DNA of 63,919 nt, the filler included, from Sluysia triapertura (taxonomy: Eukaryota), in assembly GCA_046118255.1 (NCBI GenBank). It is 5 parts of 5 records of this genome, joined end to end, with 100 filler letters (N's around TTAATTAATTAA, not from the genome) between each part and the next. Parts side by side here need not be neighbours in the genome. Positions count along the whole stretch, not along the records: positions 27,809 to 39,849 come from JBJNIA010145277.1; 4 more parts are not named here. The stretch is one strand, 5' to 3'. A program made the translations under genes and the position numbers. Under the pieces are notes generated by a model. That model saw nothing but the letters and a program-made list of their open reading frames with translations. It searched no databases and was not told the DNA's origin. Below, piece by piece: positions 27,809 through 39,849 of the stretch; position 1 is the first letter of the stretch; every line of letters begins with the position of its first letter.

Positions 27809-27880
<72 letters not shown>
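27628..27880. repeat. (ATT)n microsatellite on both sides of the spacer at 27709-27808
   Basis: Directly visible. The spacer is the same N44-TTAATTAATTAA-N44 string. Confidence 0.95.
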
Positions 27881-29658
27881 CGTTGCAATCATTATAATCA
27901 TTATCTTTCCTCTGCAATAAATAGAAACGAAGAAAATACTTCATTGTTAGAATTTTTTTGCACTATTCAATATTGAAGCCAGAAAAACCTGGAATTTATC
28001 TAGATACAATTAATCGGGATACGTGGAATATATAATTAAAGGATGGATAAAACCACAAATTACTTACGTGACTATTATAATTGTATTATAATTAGTTTTG
28101 TCGATGTCGCTTCCCTTATCCGCTTCAGCATCACTATTAAGAACACTTTCATAATTTTCCTTTACATTACATTTTTATGTTTTGTGAATTATGTATATTT
28201 CCTTTTTTCTTTTCTTTCAAATTATTACTAATTGTGTCACTTTATACCAGCAACATGAACAATCTGCACAATGTGAAGCTAGTATCTCTCAAAAAACCAA
28301 ACCAACTGATGATAATGTTATTATTTAAGAAAGATCTTCCTCTCGAAATCTGAAATACCTTGCTGATATCGTCAATTATAAATTTACATTCGTCAATATC
28401 ATACAGCATCAGCATCGCCATTATAATAATTATTATTACAATGATGATTATGATTATTATCTTCAAATGTTACCAAATCACCAAACAGTAAAAAAATAAT
28501 CATACTCGTTGAAAGTTCACATTTACTTTGATTTTAAAGAAGAAAAATATAATGATGAAGGTTGGATAAGTCGAGGATGAAATATTTCAGTTTTAGTTTT
28601 ATTTTTGTATTATTATTATAATGTTTTTGGTTTAATAATATAAAAGAAAAATTTTAAAAATCATGACAAATATATGAATTGAAAATCGATTGCAATAATT
28701 TTAAGATGCTTGACCACATAAGATTTAGCAATGCAGGAGGAAAAGATTTTTTCATTAATTTAATCATATCCATGCAATTACAGAAAACCTAATAAATGTT
28801 ACCTTCTACGCTGTCATATTTACAGTATAATAACCAAAACACGAAAATTCTGTATTCAAATGATATTCGCACATTATATTTTGAATCATCATGTCTCATA
28901 AAACTTGAATTGTTACTAAACAAACTACGAGTTACATTTTCTTCTTAATTTGTGTAACATTATCTTATTAATAAAATAAATAATTAAAATTTTTAATGTT
29001 ATAATAAAGTAAAGTGCATTAATTGTACATTAATTTATCTCATCTGAATTCATTCATTTCATGAGTGCTTCTGGTTAACGTACTTCAATTAAATTGGATA
29101 CGTAGAAATATTTATAATAACGAATAAATTTTTATATGTAAAAACAAAAAAATATCGGAAATGCCACGAACTAAAATATATGGCCGAATATGTATAATTT
29201 GTATGACAATAAATATTATAAATTATCGATGAATCTAAATACAAATTCAGTATTTTGAGGTACAATTTCATTATTATTAATACTTGGTATATTTTAGTTA
29301 AGATGCAATTCGATTCGTTTTAAAGCTTTTCTTTTATTAAAAATTTTAATAAAATAAAAATTCGTATTCATTCTAATAACGCTAATTATCAAGAAATATT
29401 TCGAACCAAATACTTATATTTTAATGATATGAAAGACTAAGTAATCGAGTGGAAGAAGTTCGTGGAATTAAATGTTTTTATGTAGAAAAATGATGTTTGT
29501 AAATGTTTTCCTATTTGTGTTGGCAAATCTTGTTTTGATATAAATTCGATTTTAAAATTTTTCTTAAGCTGAATGTTAAAGATGACATACATAAATTATT
29601 TAACGATAATAAAGTTCACAGAAACACATAGAAAGCACTAATCTTTTCAGTTGTACTA

Positions 29659-32600
29659 TCAAGACAATTTGGTGTTATTTTTAATATGAAAAACAAAAAT
29701 AATAATTACTGTGGTAACCAAATCTCTGAGTATATTTAATTCTTCTTCGTTAAACGGTTTCTTTGCAAGGCAGAAAAATGTTAATTTTATCTTAGGTTGG
29801 AAAATTTTACCAGAAGTTTCTTGAAGTACACATTTTGTTCGTATAAATTTAGCTTGACAGAACTTTGAATTATACAACATTAGCCATCCCCTTGAATCTG
29901 TCCAAAATGGATATGTACAAAAAAAGCGACATTTGGACTTTTCTATTTGTAAACAATCCAAAATTCTTTCGGATGTTTTATTTAAAATTGATTCAACAAA
30001 AGGTGGATTTATTGTCCAACCACAATTTAATGTATTACGCCGATTTGGCAGCACTTCGAAAAAATTGCCTAGACTTCCAAATAAGCGATCTATTTCCGGA
30101 AATATACTACAGAAACCATGAATTTGTCTAACATTTTTTTCTGAACAAACTTAATAAATTAAATAAAATACAATTCGAAATAAATTAATATAATAATCCA
30201 TAAAAAGAAAATTATTGAGGAAGTCAGATTAACTATCAATATCTGACAAACAACAATATTCATAGATATAAATTATGTTTGTGACTATATTTTGTACTCT
30301 GTGATGCTGAATTCGTTTGAAAGTACGAGAATGTCGGAATATTACGTAATTTAGTATGAAACCATGCTTTAAAATAAGTCAAGCAGTCAAGGACACGTTT
30401 TCTAGTTGCTTCAATGAAAGTCATTAAATTAGGAAAATTATTTAAATTTAAAACTAACCAATCTAATGAATAAATTAAAGATAAATAATACAATAATTTA
30501 AACTAAATCTAAATAATTTGAAATAAAATAAATTCTTCAAGAACTCTAATAATCTCAAGAAAACCTTTAAAATCTGAAAATGGGAAATAAACATCTTAAA
30601 AATGCATTTAAAAACAGTTAAAGTAAAATAATGATTTTATTCTTAATTCCTTCTCTAACACCAAAGACGAGTTAAAATCACGACTTTACATCAGGTGGAA
30701 ACTTTCTTAAGATAAAAATTTGTAAAATAAACAATTAAATGAAATTCGTTCGCTTGTGCTTTCCCATACCGATAAACACAATATTATTAATACGTTTCAT
30801 TTACAAACTCAGTCATAAATATTTGTTATTATAGTTGATTAACTTGGTTAATTATTGAAAACTCTGGAATTACCTATTTTATTTATCTGAACAATTATTG
30901 TGTGACCAGAACAGAAATTATACTCAGTAAAGTAGAATGAATTTGAAAACTACATTAAGTCCCCTTGACTATATATGTATTTCTTTACTTTGTTTGCAGA
31001 ATATAGAAAGAAGTTAAGAACTAAACCCACGTTATACATTGATTTGATTGATAGGAATTATAAATAAAAATTATACGTAGTGATTTAAAGTTAAACCATT
31101 GGTAAAGTAATCTTAATAAATTAATACGAATAATCTTAATTCAATCTATTTCATTTTTTAGCTAATTTCACGACATACCAAATTTTCTCCAAAATTATAT
31201 ATGTATTATTACTGTAATTATATGATCAATTTCATCTATATAATTCCACTTTGTATTTTAGCTTTGGTCATATAATTCATGTTCATCCGTTTTGTTAATG
31301 TATTCATTATGCATGCTGCTTTTCATTTATATTTTAAGAGAATTACATATCCATAGCTTTTTCTTTCGCCTAATTAAGTATGATAGATTCTATTTTTCAT
31401 TATTATTTTATTTTCATTTTCTTACACTTTCTTCTAAGTTTAAGTGATTTTTGAAGTATTTTCTTCCCATTTAAGATCTTTATTAATTTTCCATTTGAAA
31501 TTACAGAGACTTAGAGTTCTTGACACCATTTATTTGAATTTTACAGTAATTATTATTATAGGATAATAATAAGTGCATAATTAACAAGTAATATTACAAT
31601 AAGACTAATAAAAAACATTGAAAAATGAGTAATAATAATAATAACAACAGTTGCATTAAGGTATTTACTTATTCATAACTATTGTTTTTATGAAACAAAA
31701 TGTTAATATAAATTAATAAATATAAGCCTACCGAATAATTATAATTTATTAAGCTCTGTAACATATAATTCATCTAATTAAATATTAATTATACTTATTT
31801 TATTTCATAATAAAAATAAAATACACTATATTCTGTGAACTTAATAGGAATTATTAATTTAAATTCTTAAATACATTTAAACTAATTAAAATATATGCTT
31901 GCAATTCTTCGACCAAAATTACCATTCAACATTCATCAAAATAATTCGTTATAACTCTTACAAGTCACTAAATGGTTTGCTAATAAAGCGTTGCTAAAAT
32001 GGTTTGATCAAATTCAGTTAGAAATTGAAATGTCAGAATAGATGTGCTCAAATAGGTTCCGGCAGCATTTTAAAAGCACGAAAATAGTATTTAAAGTTAC
32101 TAGATATATTACTGAAGATATTTTTAATGTGGATGAAACAAGAATATTTTATAATCTTTTAACAAATCAAATATCCTTTAAGAGAAAAATTTTCATGAAG
32201 AAAGAAGATGAAAGATCGAAAGCAGTAGTTACCTTACGAAACTTGCCATAATTTAAAGCTTATATATTCTTAATGTTTGCTGACATTTTTCCTATAAATT
32301 ATGAATTTAGACATTACTACTATCACACTTGTCATTTTCAGTCCAATAATCCAAGACAACATGAACTTCTTCAAACAGCATTATTGTTATGCGCTATATT
32401 ATGCAAGTGATGGAACTAAAATCATAAGCTTTTGACTAAACTAATTATTGAATTTATATATTCAGTTCGAATGCTGTTAATGCAAGGCACAATCATTAAT
32501 TTTTCCGAAAATCTCGTTTTACGCCGCTGCTGAAATAAAATAAATCAATACGGTTAATAATTAAGAGCAATTAAGACCTTTATAAGCAATTCAGAGAACG

Positions 32601-34097
32601 GCTTTTCGGAAAATAATAAATGACATACAAATGTGCTTGAAGACTGTATTCTGAAGTTAGAAATTCTTTTGAAGTTAAAAATCATTTTATAAAATTAATT
32701 AAAGTAAAAAGAACTTTTTATTTCTATTTCCTATCATTTTCCACAAATTCTTAATCGTTTCAAACTTATTTCATTAAAGCAATCAGATATTTTTAAAATA
32801 AAAATTAACAAAGATAAACGTTATTCTTCTGCAAATTTACTTAATTTTCCAATTTTAAAAATCTTAATTACTGTGATGTAATTTTAGAAACAAGCTGTGA
32901 TTTGTTATTTAATTTATACTAATAATTAATATACAGTAATATTACTGTCATTGTACTGTTTTATCAGTAATAGTTAATCGCGAAAAGGGAAATATTTTTT
33001 ATTTTAAAATTAAATATCTTATTCTTTTACATAATATAAATTCTGTAATAAAAATTTAAATGTACTCTTAAATATATAAATATAATTTTGAATTAATGTT
33101 TCCTTATTCAATTTATATACTACAAATTAATAGAGTAATGTTTCTACTTTTAATTGCTTAAACCACTTAATTGCTTTAACTGATATATATATTTTGTATT
33201 TTAAAATTAAATCTTATTTAAATAAACTAAATTAAATATTCGATATTAGAAATTTTAAATATAGTGAATAATTTTGAATTCTAATTCATAAACCATTTAT
33301 TTAAAATTTATATTATAAATAATAAATTATAAACTCACTTTTCTTTTTACCATCAATAAGTTGACCATTATTTTTCATATTAATATCTAAATACAAAGAT
33401 TATTTTGTAACTTAAATTTTTTATGTTTAATATTAACAAAACCTAATGAATTCAGTTATTTAAAAATATTAGAATTAGTTGGATGATCATAAAACTAACT
33501 TAATAAACGTGAATTAATAGGCGATGCAAATCCTTCATGGACAACATTGAATCGTTGATATAATATTTCATGGAATTCAATTGGATCACCCCACTGGTAA
33601 CTTCCATTTCCAAAAGCTTCATATGTAAGTAACACTTTAACAATGTTGTTCAACATGTCTTTTTTTGGACACAAACGAAGTAAAAGTTCTTGATTTAAAA
33701 AGTCTGTTCCATGAAAATCACCTATCGTTATTTTACCATTTATCACTTCTGGCGAAGGAGGAATAATGTTTTCAAATGTTTTGTTATTAGACAAAATTAG
33801 TTCCAGCATATTCTTTTTTGCTTCAATAGCTGCATCTTCTGTCCAAAAGATATTCTTCTTTAAAAGACCATTTATCAAAACTTGAAATAATCCATCGTGA
33901 AATTTAGCATCAGGCAGCAAAGGAAAATTAGAACATTTAAATATACCTTTCATTTGATGTACTTCAAGTAACCAATGCTGAAAAGCATTCGTACATTCCC
34001 GTTTTTCAAGTTCTGATGTTACATTTTCAAATAAAAATGGATATAATTGTTGATCGAAAAACTTCCATTGTCGATATGCTACATTTAAATCATTCAT
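29659..34097 (-). CDS. PCIF1: PCIF1/CAPAM-like cap-specific adenosine N6-methyltransferase, compact form, ~375 aa; exons 34097-33500, 33386-33339, 30140-29659
   Basis: Motifs AFQHWLLE...PLLP, LLTY..GNGSYQW, EGFASPINS, FCSIFPEIDRLFGSLGNFF and INPPFVE parallel PCIF1 (FNRWMLE..DPLLP, ECFASPLN, YCSAFPDTDGYFGS, NPPF). Two phase-1 GT-AG introns join 598+48+482 = 1128 nt in frame. The 5' and 3' ends are less certain, and a possible extra donor lies at 29709. Confidence 0.85.
31960..32640 (+). mobile_element. Tigger/pogo DDE transposase relic
   Basis: YITEDIFNVDETRIFYNLL...ERSKAVVTL matches YxPxDIFNxDETGLFY...SKxRxT. The rest is broken. Confidence 0.8.
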
Positions 34098-35108
34098 AAT
34101 AAATTTAAATATCAGAGTTAAAAAAATGTTAAGAGCATAATATAGATATAATATTAAAACAATTTGAAAAACTTTAATCTAAGCAAATTAAATCTGAATA
34201 ATAAAAATAATTTTTAACTGTACCTACATATAAAAATAATTTCAATTAAAGATGTGTTGTGATGATCCAACACTAAATCCTAATGATATTTTTCGAAGTA
34301 AATATCATCAAATCATTTATATCTTGACTTAAATATTAAACATAACTTCCATATTTTCTAGAATTTTACACTGGTTATATTAATTTTCAATCTTTATACT
34401 AATGTTCGATTAAGTCTAAGCTTTTAAAAATAAAACCAATTTTAAAAAATTGGTAAAACGTTGAATGTAACACAAAAATGACAACTCCAGAGAAATAAGA
34501 GTTTTATTAATTATCGTCATTAATATGTAATTAGTTTTTAGTATTATTTTACATTTTTGTATATTTTTTTATTCACTTAGATGTGCTCGGTTTTCTTTTT
34601 ATGTTTTCCATAAGCAAAATAATTTAAATTCTTATTTTATAATCTACGACTTACACTCAATGAGAGCGTAGTTGTAAATAAGACAATTATCAAAGTACAG
34701 AATTTATTTAAATTCTTATTTTAAACTTATTAACAGGACAATAAAGATCAAAATACTTTCATTAAATATGTATATGTAACAACTTTTAACTTCAAAAGTA
34801 AATGGTACAGATGTATAATCAATCTGGCAACGAATATAATATGATATCAAAATATCAAAATATTAGAGATGATTACTCTAATATTAAATAAACGAATTTT
34901 AAAACACATTTGGTAATTTAATATAATTTTTCCTATATTTTAAGTTTCACTTATGTGAAAAAACTTACGTTCATGGAAGTCTGTGTAACGAAATTAAAGT
35001 TATAAAATGTAATTGACAATTGAAATGATCAGAGAACCAGCAACGCAGCTTTTATCTTCCAAAAATAGCATCATTAAAGTAATATTCCTACAAAATAAAA
35101 ATAGATAA

Positions 35109-36080
35109 GTGAATTCACCAACGTATTTAGACTTACAAATTATGACTAACCGTTGGATTTTAAAGAAATAACGCTAAAAACTTCTGCAGGTTAATATATG
35201 ATCAACAATGTCTAGTGGTACTTAATTGAGCTGTGTTTTGTCTATTCTGCTATTAAAATATTTGTCATATTATGTCTATTACAGTAGAGGGTTTAAGTAA
35301 AATTCTTGTATATTTTATCAGTTAATTTTACAGGAGATCCTTCTTAAATAGAATCTATCAAAATTTAATACTTTACAGTATCTGATGTGAAATTTGGGAT
35401 TAGTAATTAATTTAGTAATTAGTAATTAATTTGAATAATTTTGAAATTATAGAATTTACAAAAGATCCTTCTTAAATTAGACCGTTATGCAAATTTTAAT
35501 TTGTCTAATGGTAACTTTATATATGGAAATTTACGAATGATCCTATTAAACACGATCAATAAATTCAATAAGTTACGCGCTCCGATATTGAAAAATCGGC
35601 TCTTTTGAAAACAATTAGAATAAAAATTATTTTAATTTAAGGCAACGAATCTAGTAAAAACAAAAAAATCATTTTATATATGTATTAAATAGAATATAAT
35701 TTTATATTACAATCAGATCAAATTAACTTTCACAAATTATAGTTAAGGTTAAGCTTTCTTGTTATTTTTAAGTGGTTACTGGCCTAACAGTATTGGTCTT
35801 AAAAAGATATATATTAATCAAAGATTTTATATCGAACATTTTTTAAAATGGTTCTAAAATAGTTCAGGGTTGGTTTAAGTTAATTTTACACTGTACATAA
35901 AATATACTTAACTTAAGCAAAAACAAACTAACAATTGAATTTTCACAAAATGTCAAAGAAAAAATTGTCTTCTAAAGAACTGTCTTAAAATATTCGAAAT
36001 CTCGTTCCAATAAAAAAACTAATGCTGGTGAATCTTAATAAGATTTAAAAATAATTTCTGTATGAGTTTTTTTAATGAAT
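35109..36080 (-). repeat. Structured non-coding repeat, copy C (more diverged)
   Basis: The reverse complement contains GTTAGTTTGTTT, GATCGTGTTTAATAGGATCATTCGTAAA and CCAACGGTTAG...GTAAGTCTAAATACGTTGGTGAATTCAC in the same order as copies A and B. Confidence 0.75.
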
Positions 36081-36619
36081 GAATGAATAATTAAAACAAA
36101 ATTAATTAAAGCACTAATAACAAAAATAAAATAGATTAAAATAATAATTAAAACCATTTACATTTAAAATAATTATTCCAAAGCAATAAATTATTTTCCC
36201 AATAATAAAACAATTTCATCAAAATAAAATAAATTAATTAAAGCAATAATAAAATGTTTACAGTAAATTAATCAATAAATCTATTTACAATATTTATCAA
36301 ATTCTGGTCATAAATTAATCCAGAAAATTTATTAAACAATCCAAACTGTTGAAATAATAAAATTTTTACGATAAAACCGTCCAAATAAAATTATTATGAT
36401 AGAGTTAGTAAAAATAATTTTTTCGCTAAGCGACAGTAAAAAATGTTTAACGTTTGAAATTTATTTAATTATTTTTTTTATTTTGACTAATTGGAAGCAT
36501 TTAATATTTGAAATTATTTACATTAATTTTTTATTGTAACAGTTTTTATTTACAAAATTTTTTAACAAAATTACAAATGCATTGCTTTGAACTTTTTTAC
36601 AAATGCTCTTAGAAATACT

Positions 36620-37560
36620 GCCCGTTAGGAAAGATTCGTCCTCCAATAAGAAAAGCGAGTTAAACTCCAATCTAAGTCAACCGGATTGTAGACTGAGCTT
36701 CATGGTTTGATTACTGGTGTATTAGTTGCAGATTCATTGTTATAAGAGGATGCTGAAGCACCACGGATATTGTTTGTTTCAATCCTAGAATGCGACGAAG
36801 TATCATATGATGTTAGGTTCCACTGTTTGTCGTATTATCACGATCACCATTACTGAAATATTGCCGAATATTGCAAGCCAATCAAGTGTTAGCATATGTA
36901 ATATCAGAAAAGGAAGTAGTAAGAAGCAATTAGGCAAAAGGTTGTGTCCTTATCTCTGATTAAATCAAGGAGAGCGACCATTTCTGTATCAAATAGAGCG
37001 AAAGTCATTTTAGGTGCTACGGGATAGATTTGGAGAGTCCTGATAGATAATCTACCGAAATGAAATAAATGATTTTGTAGTTAGACATATTAATAATACC
37101 GTGCAACCACCAAAAGACAAACCGGAGTGATTTATCATGTAAATGAACAAGGAAATTCTGACGATGTCATCAATGTCGCTAGGTTTTACCAAATTGCTAG
37201 ATATGCGAAGATCTCTAAGGAAATTATAGATGCGCATGCGTAGATGAATCTTAACCTCCGTGTGATATTGCTTGATATACGGAGTACTTACTATAGGTAT
37301 AATTTGAGGATTCTCCTTAAAGACTAAACTGTCCTCATAATAAAAATACCTGTGGATCACATTTGTCGAGAAGCATGACAAGAAGGAAGAAGCCGTCGGT
37401 GTAATAAAATCGTATAATAAGGCCACTTGGTGAAAATGAAAAGATATGGGTCGCCATATTAATATCCAATTCACTCGTCAATTTATTATCAGTCGAAAAG
37501 AAGGCTGAAAAAGAAAGCTGGAGTAGGCTCCTCAGTACAAAAGCGGTCTATAGAAATATA
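36620..37560. pseudogene. GC-richer decayed coding-like segment of unknown origin (includes the minus-strand 140-aa ORF 37052-37474)
   Basis: Base composition is visibly more balanced than the flanks and open frames are longer. No motif recognised. Confidence 0.3.
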
Positions 37561-37799
37561 AAAGGTTCTTAATTGATCAACTGATCAATGACGTGATATC
37601 AGACTAAATAGAAATAGAAAGATAAAATATGTACAGGAAAATTTAATTCAGTCATAAATTTTTATTGTTATTATAATTTGTATAATTATTAATTAACTAG
37701 GCATAATTTTAAGAAATTTTTTAAGAAATTGATTAATGTTTCGTTTAGAAGTATTCTACTCATTCTTATAAAAGAGCTTTAATTGTCTCCTTCTACGAT

Positions 37800-39450
37800 T
37801 TCTTTTTTGTGACTGTGAGATTTGGTAGAAAGTTACGCACAGGTCTTTACAGCCCTTGTCGATTCAAGTTTATATTTACTAGCCTCTTTTACCAATGGGT
37901 TTCATTCACTTACTGGAATAGGAGAATATTGATCTTCGTATTTTACAGAAAACTCGAAAACCGACGAAATGTCTTTTTGTTGTATATATCGCACGAGCCT
38001 ATATAGCTCATCACTTTAGGTGATTTCTTAAGTTACATATTTGATTTTGTTTTAAGGTATTATTAAAAAAGGTTTAATTTAGTATAACATTATTGACAGT
38101 AAAATTCATAGCCATTAAAGGAATAGTAATATTCACAAGGTTTTTAATTTTATATCACTGCTCTAGAATTGTTTTTACTGGAGTAATTTATAAATGTTTG
38201 TTTGTATTGATAGATTTTTTAACATGTGTTCTACTAAGACACATTTTAGGATTTTCTAGAAATATCTGCACTGCTCGAATGTTTTATATATATTATCCAA
38301 AGGAAATCCTATGCAGCTCTTTGAAGAATTATTTGTGGCTCTCGAGTTCACTTTTCATTTTTGTGTTATTATATTTTAAAAAATTATTATCGTTCCGCAT
38401 GTGTTTCAAAATGTCTTAAATTACTGATAACAAATATGAAAGACTAAGTGCAACGTTTTAACAAATTTAATTTCCCTCCAAGTTAAGAATGATATAACTC
38501 ATACTTTTTATACGTATTTAATTGCGGCTCGCGAAAAATTTCAAATACTGAAAAATGGCTCTGACTATCAAGGAACTTGGCCAACCCTGATTTAGAGCTA
38601 TATTCATATTCCTTTATTCTTCTTCGGACTTACTGCTTTTATTAGTACAAAAATATACAATAACAACAAAAACACAATCAGTTTTATAGGAAACAAATAC
38701 TTTCTTTTCAAATTTATGGCATTACTGATGAGTCTGATACTTTTTCAGCATTATATGATATTATATCCAGATATTACATCCGGAGATTCAAAAGAATGTG
38801 GTCTTGATGTAGGGATTGGAGAGGGATTGATTCAGTATTTTTGTTTGCATTATTTGGAATTGGTGTTTGTAATATTGTACTTCCTCTCCAATGTGTGGAA
38901 CAATAATTTCTGGTACTATCTTATGTGATCTGTGTGAAAATTTTACAAAGCCGTATTTACTATGAATTACAATATCATCAAGTTTATCTATAACATCCAA
39001 TCCCATTATTAATTCAAATGGACTGTTGTCCCATACACTTATGAGTATATTAGCACAATTAATTATGAGTATATTAATGTCAATTCTCCATTAATGTTTA
39101 TTGGAACATGTTTTATACTATAAATTGTTGTTTTAGGTGGATTCATTATGATGGTTTCCCAAGTTGTTAGACAATTAAACTGAACAACTGATGTGGTAGC
39201 TCCAGTATCAATAACAGTTTTGATCCATGTACAAAAATATATTTTGAAACATGTGGTGTTATATCCCTACTGACATCATTACTATTTGCTTACTTATAAA
39301 AGAATGAATTGAAGGTGGTCTTCTTGTTTTGGTTTAATTTTCAGTATTGTCTTAGAAACTTTTCTATTTTTTAAATTATATTCTTCCTACGGCCTATTTT
39401 GCATCGGTTAACATGTACTACTACAGTATCTGAGTTACTTTTATTCGGAT
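37800..39450 (-). mobile_element. Gypsy/Ty3 LTR-retrotransposon pol debris
   Basis: Retropepsin WIKTVIDTGATTSVV (about 39228-39184) with downstream LIMGLDVIDKL. An integrase C-terminal-like VVHVNRCK lies near 39420 and a zinc-finger-like VMSYIGSCDIYNKK near 38010. Confidence 0.72.
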
Positions 39451-39464
39451 CTGTTGTGTCTTAC

Positions 39465-39677
39465 ATACTTTTTTATTTTACAAATTATTAATTAAAACTA
39501 AATAATTAAACAAATTAAACATATTCTTTAGATTATCACAAAATTACAACCAAAAGATAGATATAAATTATTCTTTATAACGACAATACAAAGTACTCTT
39601 TATAACAAAATACATATTATTCTCTATAACAATATTATAAATTACTCTCTAAAAACAAATCACCATCAGGGGTGACA
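39465..39677 (-). repeat. LTR-like terminus beginning TGTCACCCCTG followed by T-rich sequence
   Basis: Related TGTCACC(C) termini followed by T-rich tracts also occur at about 26708 (+), 46290 (-), 54368 (-) and 56679 (+). Confidence 0.5.
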
Positions 39678-39849
39678 CAACTTAAATCTTCACACCCGTA
39701 TTAATGCAAAATATAAACTGTAAGAAATGTACCGTATCACTAATCCTTGCTCTAAAAAGAAAACGAATTATGTTAGTCAATTGCTAAAGAAATGACTTTA
39801 GTTTCACCGTTATCCACTGATGAATTAAAGCAGCTTCCATACAGTTAAA

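What the first reader, a model, noticed from the sequence alone, without database searches (positions are those of the whole stretch)
29659..34097. Compact PCIF1/CAPAM-like methyltransferase lacking the WW domain and most of the helical domain
Seen: a ~375-aa product with intact FASP, FCSxFP-D-FGSxG and catalytic NPPF motifs. There is no WW domain after the ATG, only ~95 aa separate PLLP from LLTY, and a 48-nt Lys/Asn-rich exon is inserted inside the methyltransferase core. Knowledge: vertebrate PCIF1 is about 700 aa, binds phosphorylated Pol II CTD through its WW domain, has a much longer helical insertion, and makes m6Am at the cap. From memory, short PCIF1-domain proteins also occur in protists and large DNA viruses. 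Inference: a CTD-independent cap or other RNA adenine methyltransferase, either extremely reduced or horizontally acquired and later intronised.
Basis: partly seen in the sequence, partly recalled or inferred. Interest (0 to 1): 0.72.

Follow-up and report, generated by a model that had tools for sequence, protein, structure and literature searches.

The report
Compact giant-virus-like PCIF1 methyltransferase gene
This is an intact two-exon gene for a short (about 359 aa) PCIF1/CAPAM-type RNA adenine methyltransferase whose closest kin are short flatworm (Macrostomum) and giant-virus proteins, not the long WW-domain PCIF1 of animals. It is a further member of a catalogued but unstudied subfamily, possibly taken from a giant virus long ago.

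Summary
The gene is real and lies on the minus strand. Exon 1 is 34097-33500. A 3,359-nt GT-AG intron follows. Exon 2 is 30140-29659, stop included.

- **Family:** Both exons match Pfam PF12237. The NPPF, FASP and FCSxFPxxDxxFGSxG motifs are intact, and 24 of 25 near-invariant family residues are kept.
- **WW domain:** No WW motif occurs in any frame of the piece. An in-frame stop lies 8 codons upstream of the ATG.
- **48-nt exon:** The family profile leaves no room for it, so the product is about 359 aa, not 375.
- **Helical domain:** It is reduced, not mostly lost. The exon-1 model aligns 187 of 198 residues on zebrafish CAPAM 200-525.
- **Relatives:** The closest are compact (300-450 aa) proteins: Macrostomum lignano paralogues, three unnamed database entries, and hundreds of giant-virus proteins. 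The viral ones are often fused to cap or mRNA enzymes.
- **Phylogeny:** Trees separate this compact group from the long cellular type (support 96-99). Nesting of the flatworm clade inside viral diversity is not significant (AU p 0.39).
- **Introns:** A Macrostomum paralogue is intronless, and another has introns at other positions.

A viral origin followed by intron gain is plausible but unproven. No RNA data exist for this locus.

The parts
33500..34097 (-). Exon 1: the ATG at 34097, 199 codons and the first base of a split codon. It encodes the reduced helical domain and the first part of the methyltransferase domain, ending in HEGFASPINSRLL.
   Evidence: ORF. PF12237 at residues 146-197. 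Matches family HMM positions 8-191. Aligns colinearly with P0004 residues 13-207, 33% identity, E 2e-27. Model pLDDT 90.8, best PDB match zebrafish CAPAM at Z 9.8.
30141..33499 (-). Intron of 3,359 nt, phase 1, from GTTAGT to ..tttgttcAG. It is very A+T-rich, has no terminal repeats, and some bins have raised read depth (repeats).
   Evidence: Sequence. No flanking direct or inverted repeats. Independent DNA contigs of run X1 bridge both exon-intron junctions, and no intron-less form was seen.
29659..30140 (-). It carries FCSIFPEIDRLFGSLG, the catalytic INPPF, the rest of the Rossmann fold and a 19-aa hydrophobic tail.
   Evidence: Translation. PF12237 at 63.8 bits. Family HMM positions 198-330. 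41% identity to P0004 residues 215-328, E 3e-31. 842 relatives found in the large search.
33339..33386 (-). It is phase-compatible but not supported as a constitutive exon.
   Evidence: One of 53 such candidates in the intron. No room for it in the family profile or in any aligned relative.
34119..34121 (-). In-frame stop 8 codons upstream of the ATG. It closes the reading frame at the 5' side.
   Evidence: Sequence. No WW-like motif in any frame of 27809-39849.

Best explanation
**What it is.** An intact host gene of two exons encodes a protein of about 359 aa made only of the CAPAM core: a shortened helical domain followed by a Rossmann N6-adenine methyltransferase domain with NPPF. It belongs to the compact subfamily of PF12237. 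That subfamily is abundant in giant viruses (Nucleocytoviricota). Among named cellular organisms in my searches it turned up only in the flatworm Macrostomum lignano, as several paralogues.

**Inferred mechanism.** As in CAPAM, the cap would be held between the helical and methyltransferase domains, and the N6 of the cap-adjacent adenosine would be methylated from SAM. With no WW domain, the enzyme would not be tethered to the phosphorylated Pol II CTD.

**Inferred history.** The gene was probably acquired without introns, most likely from a giant virus, in an early flatworm lineage. It then duplicated and gained introns independently in different lineages. Its base composition now matches its surroundings.
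For: **Gene and motifs:**. The window keeps 24 of 25 near-invariant residues of a 63-sequence family alignment.

**Fold**
- The P0004 model (pLDDT 92.5) matches human CAPAM 6irw_B at Z 27.9, with 312 residues aligned over chain 196-664.
- The exon-1 model matches zebrafish CAPAM at Z 9.8. The next hit is at Z 6.2.

**Subfamily**
- The compact-family HMM covers exon 1 at positions 8-191 and exon 2 at 198-330.
- 25 loci lie on giant-virus contigs of 6-957 kb in IMG/VR, several named GVMAG.
- BFVD structure hits are CroV, Hokovirus, Pithovirus, Bodo saltans virus, Tetraselmis virus and salmon gill poxvirus.
- The nearest ESM Atlas clusters are mostly Nucleocytoviricota.
- The contig of P0133 is dense and intronless, with Rpb5 and RNase III genes.

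**Function hint**
- Relatives are fused to FtsJ cap 2'-O-methyltransferase, capping enzyme plus N7-methyltransferase, a cap N2-methyltransferase, VP39-like protein, poly(A) polymerase or XRN.

**Trees**
- Both window exons fall in a clade with the Macrostomum proteins plus P0002, P0003, P0004 and P0167 (support 98-100).
- Compact and long cellular types are separated at support 96-99.

**History**
- Macrostomum P0008 is intronless.
- P0179 sits between host genes (Mito_carr, Ras) and has two introns, neither at the window's position.
- The window exons have the same low G+C as their surroundings.
Against: - No RNA run holds the locus, so transcription, splicing and the 5' end are not shown.
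- The joined protein was never searched or folded. Each exon was treated apart, and the full-length fold rests on a relative that is 33-41% identical.
- Nesting of the flatworm clade inside viral diversity has SH-aLRT support of 97 in a quick tree of 105 rows.
- That nesting collapses to a basal polytomy with 42 rows, where the flatworm-plus-cellular split is already in the best tree at support 15.
- The AU test does not reject flatworm plus cellular types as one side of a branch (p 0.387).
- No canonical animal PCIF1 sequence was available by reference for the trees. The cellular outgroup was Trypanosoma brucei, two Diplonema sequences and unnamed proteins of about 680 aa.
- The substrate is inferred only from fold, motifs and fusion partners of relatives.
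- The source organism is unknown to me. 'Flatworm' rests on the nearest named relatives.
Confidence: 0.8

Rival explanations
1. Vertical descent. The gene is the fast-evolving flatworm descendant of the ancestral cellular PCIF1, which lost the WW domain and part of the helical domain. Giant viruses took their compact form from a similar eukaryotic source.
For: The AU test does not reject flatworm plus cellular types as one side of a branch (p 0.387). In the 42-row tree that split is even in the best tree, at support 15. [quoted passage not shown]
Against: - Exon 1 finds no vertebrate CAPAM by sequence, yet it matches viral-type compact proteins end to end at E of about 1e-10.
- The long cellular proteins match the compact HMM only at positions 142-337.
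- The compact versus long split has support 96-99.
- A Macrostomum paralogue is intronless, and intron positions are not shared.
- No other named animal appeared among the relatives.
Confidence: 0.2
2. Dead or dying gene. An originally intronless gene was split by 3.4 kb of inserted repeat-rich DNA. The in-phase GT..AG is a coincidence, and no functional mRNA is made.
For: There is no expression evidence. The interruption is long, A+T-rich, and has bins of raised depth suggesting repeats. Relatives exist that lack any intron.
Against: - Both halves keep long open frames in DNA where stops are very frequent.
- 24 of 25 near-invariant residues are kept.
- The boundaries are a GTTAGT donor and a pyrimidine-rich AG acceptor in the same phase. 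The join gives an 11-residue linker where relatives have 8-10.
- No terminal repeats or target-site duplication flank the interruption.
Confidence: 0.1
3. Incomplete model. Further 5' exons, possibly coding for a WW domain, lie upstream or beyond the piece.
For: An AG inside codons 6-7 could serve as an acceptor. P0003 and P0167 carry low-complexity N-terminal extensions of about 60-95 aa.
Against: - No WW-like motif occurs in any frame of the 5.7 kb upstream.
- An in-frame stop lies 8 codons before the ATG.
- The ATG lies within about 10 residues of the N-terminus of P0004 and of many compact relatives.
- None of the 34 long relatives scanned carries a WW domain.
Confidence: 0.07
4. It is the methyltransferase module of a DIRS1-type retrotransposon, which Iyer et al. 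place in the PCIF1 clade.
For: PMC4738411. A weak shape match (TM 0.43) to an RVT_1-bearing Atlas cluster. A retroelement-like relic lies 4.7 kb upstream.
Against: - No reverse transcriptase, RNase H or tyrosine recombinase ORF adjoins the gene.
- DIRS1 methyltransferase domains are described as catalytically degenerate, whereas NPPF and the SAM motif are intact here.
- No relative among the best 150 that was scanned carries RVT_1.
Confidence: 0.02

Closest known systems
Vertebrate PCIF1/CAPAM (human, zebrafish; PDB 6IRV-6IS0), the cap-specific m6Am methyltransferase
   Same: The same two-domain core, a helical domain followed by a Rossmann methyltransferase domain (Z 27.9 for the proxy, Z 9.8 for the window's exon 1). 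NPPF catalytic loop, FASP and FCSxFPxxDxxFGSxG motifs. A PF12237 match.
   Different: No WW domain and no linker. The helical domain is cut to about 55-60%: 198 residues span what takes 326 residues in zebrafish. Sequence similarity is very low (17-24 bits for exon 2, none detectable for exon 1). About 359 aa against about 700.
Compact PCIF1-domain proteins of giant viruses (for example CroV E3T4I2, Hokovirus A0A1V0SFI2, Tetraselmis virus A0A2P0VNQ5, and GVMAG contigs in IMG/VR)
   Same: Length of 300-450 aa. The same helical-domain plus methyltransferase-domain module from end to end (HMM positions 8-330). The same invariant residues. Grouped together against the long cellular type at support 96-99.
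   Different: The window gene sits in host-like A+T-rich DNA and has a 3.4-kb spliceosomal-type intron. The viral genes are intronless, lie in dense gene arrays, and are often fused to cap or mRNA enzymes. Identity is only 25-40%.
Macrostomum lignano 'PCIF1 WW domain-containing' proteins (PAA51302.1, PAA48317.1, PAA56815.1 and others), plus the unnamed UniParc entries P0004, P0167 and P0005
   Same: Same clade (support 98-100). Same compact architecture. 33-42% identity over both exons.
   Different: These are separate paralogue lineages. One is intronless (P0008), one has two introns at other positions (P0179), and one is a tandem triplet fused in a single gene model (P0001).

Membership tests
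PCIF1/CAPAM family (Pfam PF12237) | Profile match above the curated cut-off | tested here: met
   Exon 2 scores 63.8 bits against a cut-off of 31.1. Exon 1 adds 22.6 bits at profile positions 18-75.
PCIF1/CAPAM family (Pfam PF12237) | Catalytic NPPF loop and the SAM-binding FCSxFPxxDxxFGSxG / FASP motifs | tested here: met
   All are present. 24 of 25 near-invariant columns are kept, the exception being R to H at one helical-domain position.
PCIF1/CAPAM family (Pfam PF12237) | Helical domain packed against a Rossmann methyltransferase domain | tested here: met
   The exon-1 model matches zebrafish CAPAM at Z 9.8 with 187 of 198 residues aligned. The proxy P0004 matches at Z 27.9 with 312 of 343 aligned. 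The full window protein was not folded, because the joined step was left out.
PCIF1/CAPAM family (Pfam PF12237) | N6-methylation of cap-adjacent Am | not testable with these tools
   Inferred only from fold, motifs and the cap-enzyme fusions of relatives.
Canonical animal PCIF1 orthologues | N-terminal WW domain that binds the phosphorylated Pol II CTD | tested here: not met
   No WW-like motif in six frames of the piece. An in-frame stop lies upstream of the ATG. The compact relatives begin at the same point.
Canonical animal PCIF1 orthologues | Full-size helical domain (core of about 470-500 aa) | tested here: not met
   198 residues span zebrafish 200-525. The profile of the compact family aligns to only part of the 6irx chain.
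Canonical animal PCIF1 orthologues | Phylogenetic placement with cellular long-type PCIF1 | tested here: inconclusive
   The best trees place it with the compact and viral group at support 96-99. A sister position to the cellular type is not rejected (AU p 0.387). No animal PCIF1 sequence was available by reference.
Giant-virus-type compact PCIF1-like proteins | Helical-domain plus methyltransferase-domain module of 300-450 aa, matched from end to end | tested here: met
   HMM positions 8-191 and 198-330 of 352. Exon 1 aligns end to end with many compact proteins.
Giant-virus-type compact PCIF1-like proteins | Encoded on a viral genome | tested here: not met
   The locus has an intron, transposon relics and no neighbouring viral ORFs. 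The Macrostomum relative P0179 lies between host genes.
DIRS1 retrotransposon methyltransferase domain | Embedded in an RT/RNase H/tyrosine-recombinase polyprotein, with degenerate catalytic residues | tested here: not met
   No such ORFs adjoin the gene. The catalytic residues are intact.

The most novel reading that the evidence does not exclude
An early flatworm captured a giant-virus cap-adenosine methyltransferase. The gene was domesticated, duplicated into several paralogue lineages and gained introns independently. It now gives these animals a cap (or spliced-leader RNA) N6-methylation that does not depend on the Pol II CTD. This would be a rare case of an animal RNA-modification enzyme of giant-virus origin.
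Probability: 0.4. Interest if true: 0.65.

Novelty: new member of a known kind. Interest (0 to 1): 0.45.

Why it matters
- **A minimal enzyme.** The CAPAM core can apparently work as a module of about 340 aa with half the helical domain. That is useful for structural and enzymological work on cap m6Am.
- **An unreported animal gene family.** At least one animal lineage carries several virus-like compact copies. My literature searches found no description of this.
- **If the viral origin holds,** it adds an RNA-modification enzyme to the short list of giant-virus genes fixed in animals.
- **Testable question.** It raises whether flatworm mRNAs or spliced-leader RNAs carry m6Am.
- **For annotation.** The practical points are a two-exon model of 359 aa and the removal of the 48-nt cassette.

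Tried and rejected
- **Word-based protein search** with each exon found nothing. Its length filter excludes full-length kin.
- **ESM Atlas feature search** with exon 1 gave only unrelated hypothetical clusters.
- **RNA evidence:** no RNA run holds the locus. The one holder is DNA contigs, which only confirm both exon-intron junctions.
- **Rfam and tRNA scans** of the piece found nothing.
- **Pfam on other ORFs** of the piece, including the retropepsin-like and DDE-like relics, gave no significant family.
- **AU test with the mixture model** on 105 rows did not finish in five calls. It was replaced by LG+G4 and by a 42-row set.
- **The look-up of encoding contigs** has no record for P0004 or P0167, so their organisms stay unknown.

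- The spliced protein was never joined, searched or folded.
- Canonical animal PCIF1 sequences had no reference. They were left out of the trees and compared only through the PDB and Atlas tools.
Full report
**1. What is in the sequence**

The piece (27809-39849) is very A+T-rich, at 17-36% G+C in 500-nt windows. On the minus strand a 200-codon ORF runs from an ATG at 34097 to 33495. A second open frame of 159 codons runs from 30138 to 29662 and ends in a stop at 29661-29659.

The first ORF ends in HEGFASPINSRLL. Its last sense codon overlaps a GTTAGT donor at 33499-33494. The second frame is preceded by tttgttcAG at 30142-30141. Both sites are phase 1, so joining 33500 to 30140 keeps the frame. 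The result is 598 + 479 nt, or 359 codons.

An in-frame TAA lies 8 codons upstream of the ATG. Independent DNA contigs of a public run bridge both exon-intron junctions, and none lacks the intron.

**2. Family**

- Both exons match Pfam PF12237 (PCIF1_WW). Exon 2 scores 63.8 bits against a cut-off of 31.1. Exon 1 scores 22.6 bits on the preceding part of the profile.
- Against solved structures, exon 2 finds only zebrafish CAPAM (24 bits) and human CAPAM (17 bits). Exon 1 finds neither.
- Added as fragments to a 63-sequence family alignment, the window keeps 24 of 25 invariant or near-invariant residues. These include the FASP, FCSxFPxxDxxFGSxG and NPPF motifs.
- The gene therefore looks constrained and catalytically competent.

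**3.

The segment is at 33386-33339 and has good splice signals. It is nevertheless one of 53 phase-compatible, stop-free AG..GT segments in the 3,359-nt intron.

An HMM built from 91 compact relatives matches exon 1 at positions 8-191 and exon 2 at positions 198-330. Relatives have 8-10 residues between NS[RK] and FCS. The direct join gives 11 residues, and the cassette would give 27. I treat the cassette as unsupported, although only RNA data can exclude occasional use.

**4. WW and helical domains**

- No WW-like motif occurs in any frame of the piece.
- The ATG lies about 10 residues from the N-terminus of the closest full-length relative, P0004. Many compact relatives begin at the same point.
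- The helical domain is present but shortened. A model of the window's own exon 1 (pLDDT 90.8) was compared with 48,161 PDB representatives. Zebrafish CAPAM was the clear best match: Z 9.8, 187 of 198 residues aligned, chain 200-525. The next hit was at Z 6.2.
- A model of P0004 (pLDDT 92.5) aligns 312 of 343 residues to human CAPAM 196-664 at Z 27.9.
[quoted passage not shown] It also states that the cap is held between the helical and methyltransferase domains. The compact form keeps four long helices, a beta-hairpin and two or three further helices.

**5. Relatives**

- The exhaustive search with exon 2 found 842 proteins. None was closer than about 46% identity.
- The best hits are Macrostomum lignano proteins, among them a gene model of three tandem copies. 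They are followed by three UniParc entries without names and two metagenome or Logan sequences.
- Most other hits are 300-450 aa long and intronless on short contigs.
- The long hits are fusions to mRNA enzymes: FtsJ cap 2'-O-methyltransferase, capping enzyme plus N7-methyltransferase, cap N2-methyltransferase with a DEAD helicase, VP39-like protein, poly(A) polymerase catalytic subunit, XRN and RNA polymerase subunits. None carries a WW domain.
- A scan of IMG/VR found 25 loci on giant-virus contigs of 6-957 kb.
- BFVD structure hits are CroV, Hokovirus, Pithovirus, Bodo saltans virus, Tetraselmis virus and salmon gill poxvirus.
- The nearest ESM Atlas clusters are mostly Nucleocytoviricota. 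The chordate WW-PCIF1 cluster is a more distant structural match.
- The contig of the unnamed relative P0133 is a dense, intronless array with Rpb5 and RNase III genes.

**6. Phylogeny**

The two exons were entered as separate rows and never joined.

- Both exons fall in one clade with the Macrostomum paralogues and P0002, P0003, P0004 and P0167. Support is 98 with FastTree, 100 with IQ-TREE on 105 rows, and 99 on 42 rows.
- The compact group (viral plus flatworm) is separated at support 96-99 from a long cellular type: Trypanosoma brucei, two Diplonema sequences and unnamed proteins of about 680 aa. That long type matches the compact HMM only in the methyltransferase domain.
- In the 105-row tree the flatworm clade is nested among viral sequences at support 97.
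- With 42 rows this nesting becomes a basal polytomy. There the flatworm-plus-cellular split is already in the best tree, at support 15.
- The AU test does not reject flatworm plus cellular types on one side of a branch (lnL difference 10.4, p 0.387).

The direction and reality of a transfer are therefore not established.

**7. Gene structure in relatives**

Macrostomum P0008 is intronless. P0179 lies between ordinary host genes and has two introns, after about residues 104 and 267. Neither is at the window's intron position. This fits an intronless ancestor with independent intron gain. The window's exons share the low G+C of their surroundings, which argues for long residence.

**8. Function**

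- **Shown:** family membership, intact catalytic motifs, and a CAPAM-like fold in both domains.
- **Inferred:** SAM-dependent N6-methylation of the cap-adjacent adenosine without CTD tethering. This rests on the retained cap-clamping architecture and on the repeated fusion of relatives to cap-modifying enzymes. I put it at about 0.5. Another RNA adenine target is possible.

**9. Known or new**

PF12237 proteins of giant viruses and of Macrostomum are already annotated in public databases, but I found no study of them. Iyer et al. (PMC4738411) describe the PCIF1 clade, its usual WW fusion, and DIRS1-embedded inactive copies. The window gene is neither of the latter two.

It is a new member of a catalogued but uncharacterised compact subfamily. 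The source organism was not disclosed. The nearest named relatives suggest a flatworm, but that is a lead only.

**10. Limits**

- There is no RNA evidence for this locus.
- No canonical animal PCIF1 sequence was in the trees.
- The quick tree searches include many long branches.

Noticed in passing
window 38791-39290 (-): Stop-free segments carry a retropepsin-like DTGA motif (..VIDTGATTSVV..) and a downstream ..LIMGLDVI.. motif. This looks like a decayed LTR-retroelement protease. No Pfam family reached significance.
   Followed up: partly
window 32042-32251 (+), inside the intron: A 69-codon ORF with ..DIFNVDETRIFYN.., reminiscent of a pogo/Tigger DDE transposase. Pfam gave no support (best E about 0.1, to unrelated families).
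   Followed up: partly
window 29662-29718 (-): The predicted protein ends in a 19-residue hydrophobic tail (VTTVIIIFVFHIKNNTKLS) that the relatives lack. It may be a tail anchor, or simply read-through to the first stop in A+T-rich DNA.
   Followed up: no
window 27809-27880 and 39561-39659: A perfect (TAT)24 microsatellite lies at the edge of the piece. A 25-nt tandem repeat of about 4 copies lies near the other end.
   Followed up: no
window 36809-37308: A local rise in G+C to 36%, against about 25% around it. No ORF family, tRNA or Rfam match explains it.
   Followed up: partly
window 33296-33449 and 31602-31755: Summed contig depth in the DNA run rises to 87-133, against about 20-30 elsewhere. 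Many loose ends occur there as well. These parts of the intron are probably repeated in the genome.
   Followed up: no
P0001 / P0151 / P0152 (Macrostomum lignano, PAA56815.1 and others): One gene model of 1,204-1,283 aa consists of three near-identical compact PCIF1 units in tandem. It is either a tandem gene triplet fused by annotation or a true three-unit protein.
   Followed up: no
P0043, P0144, P0014, P0122 (FtsJ fusions); P0119, P0121 (capping enzyme and methyltransferase fusions); P0009, P0060 (poly(A) polymerase); P0086, P0031 (XRN); P0089 (helicase with cap N2-methyltransferase): Giant-virus-like proteins repeatedly fuse the compact PCIF1 module to cap-forming, cap-methylating, polyadenylating or 5'-3' exonuclease domains. 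This is guilt-by-association evidence for a role at the mRNA 5' end.
   Followed up: partly
P0110, P0132, P0143, P0162, P0170: Unnamed proteins of 650-850 aa carry two compact PCIF1 modules in tandem.
   Followed up: no
ESM Atlas cluster with RVT_1 (row 4): A reverse-transcriptase-bearing cluster of 784 aa gives a weak shape match (TM 0.43) to the compact model. These may be the DIRS1-type elements with a PCIF1-like domain that Iyer et al. mention.
   Followed up: no
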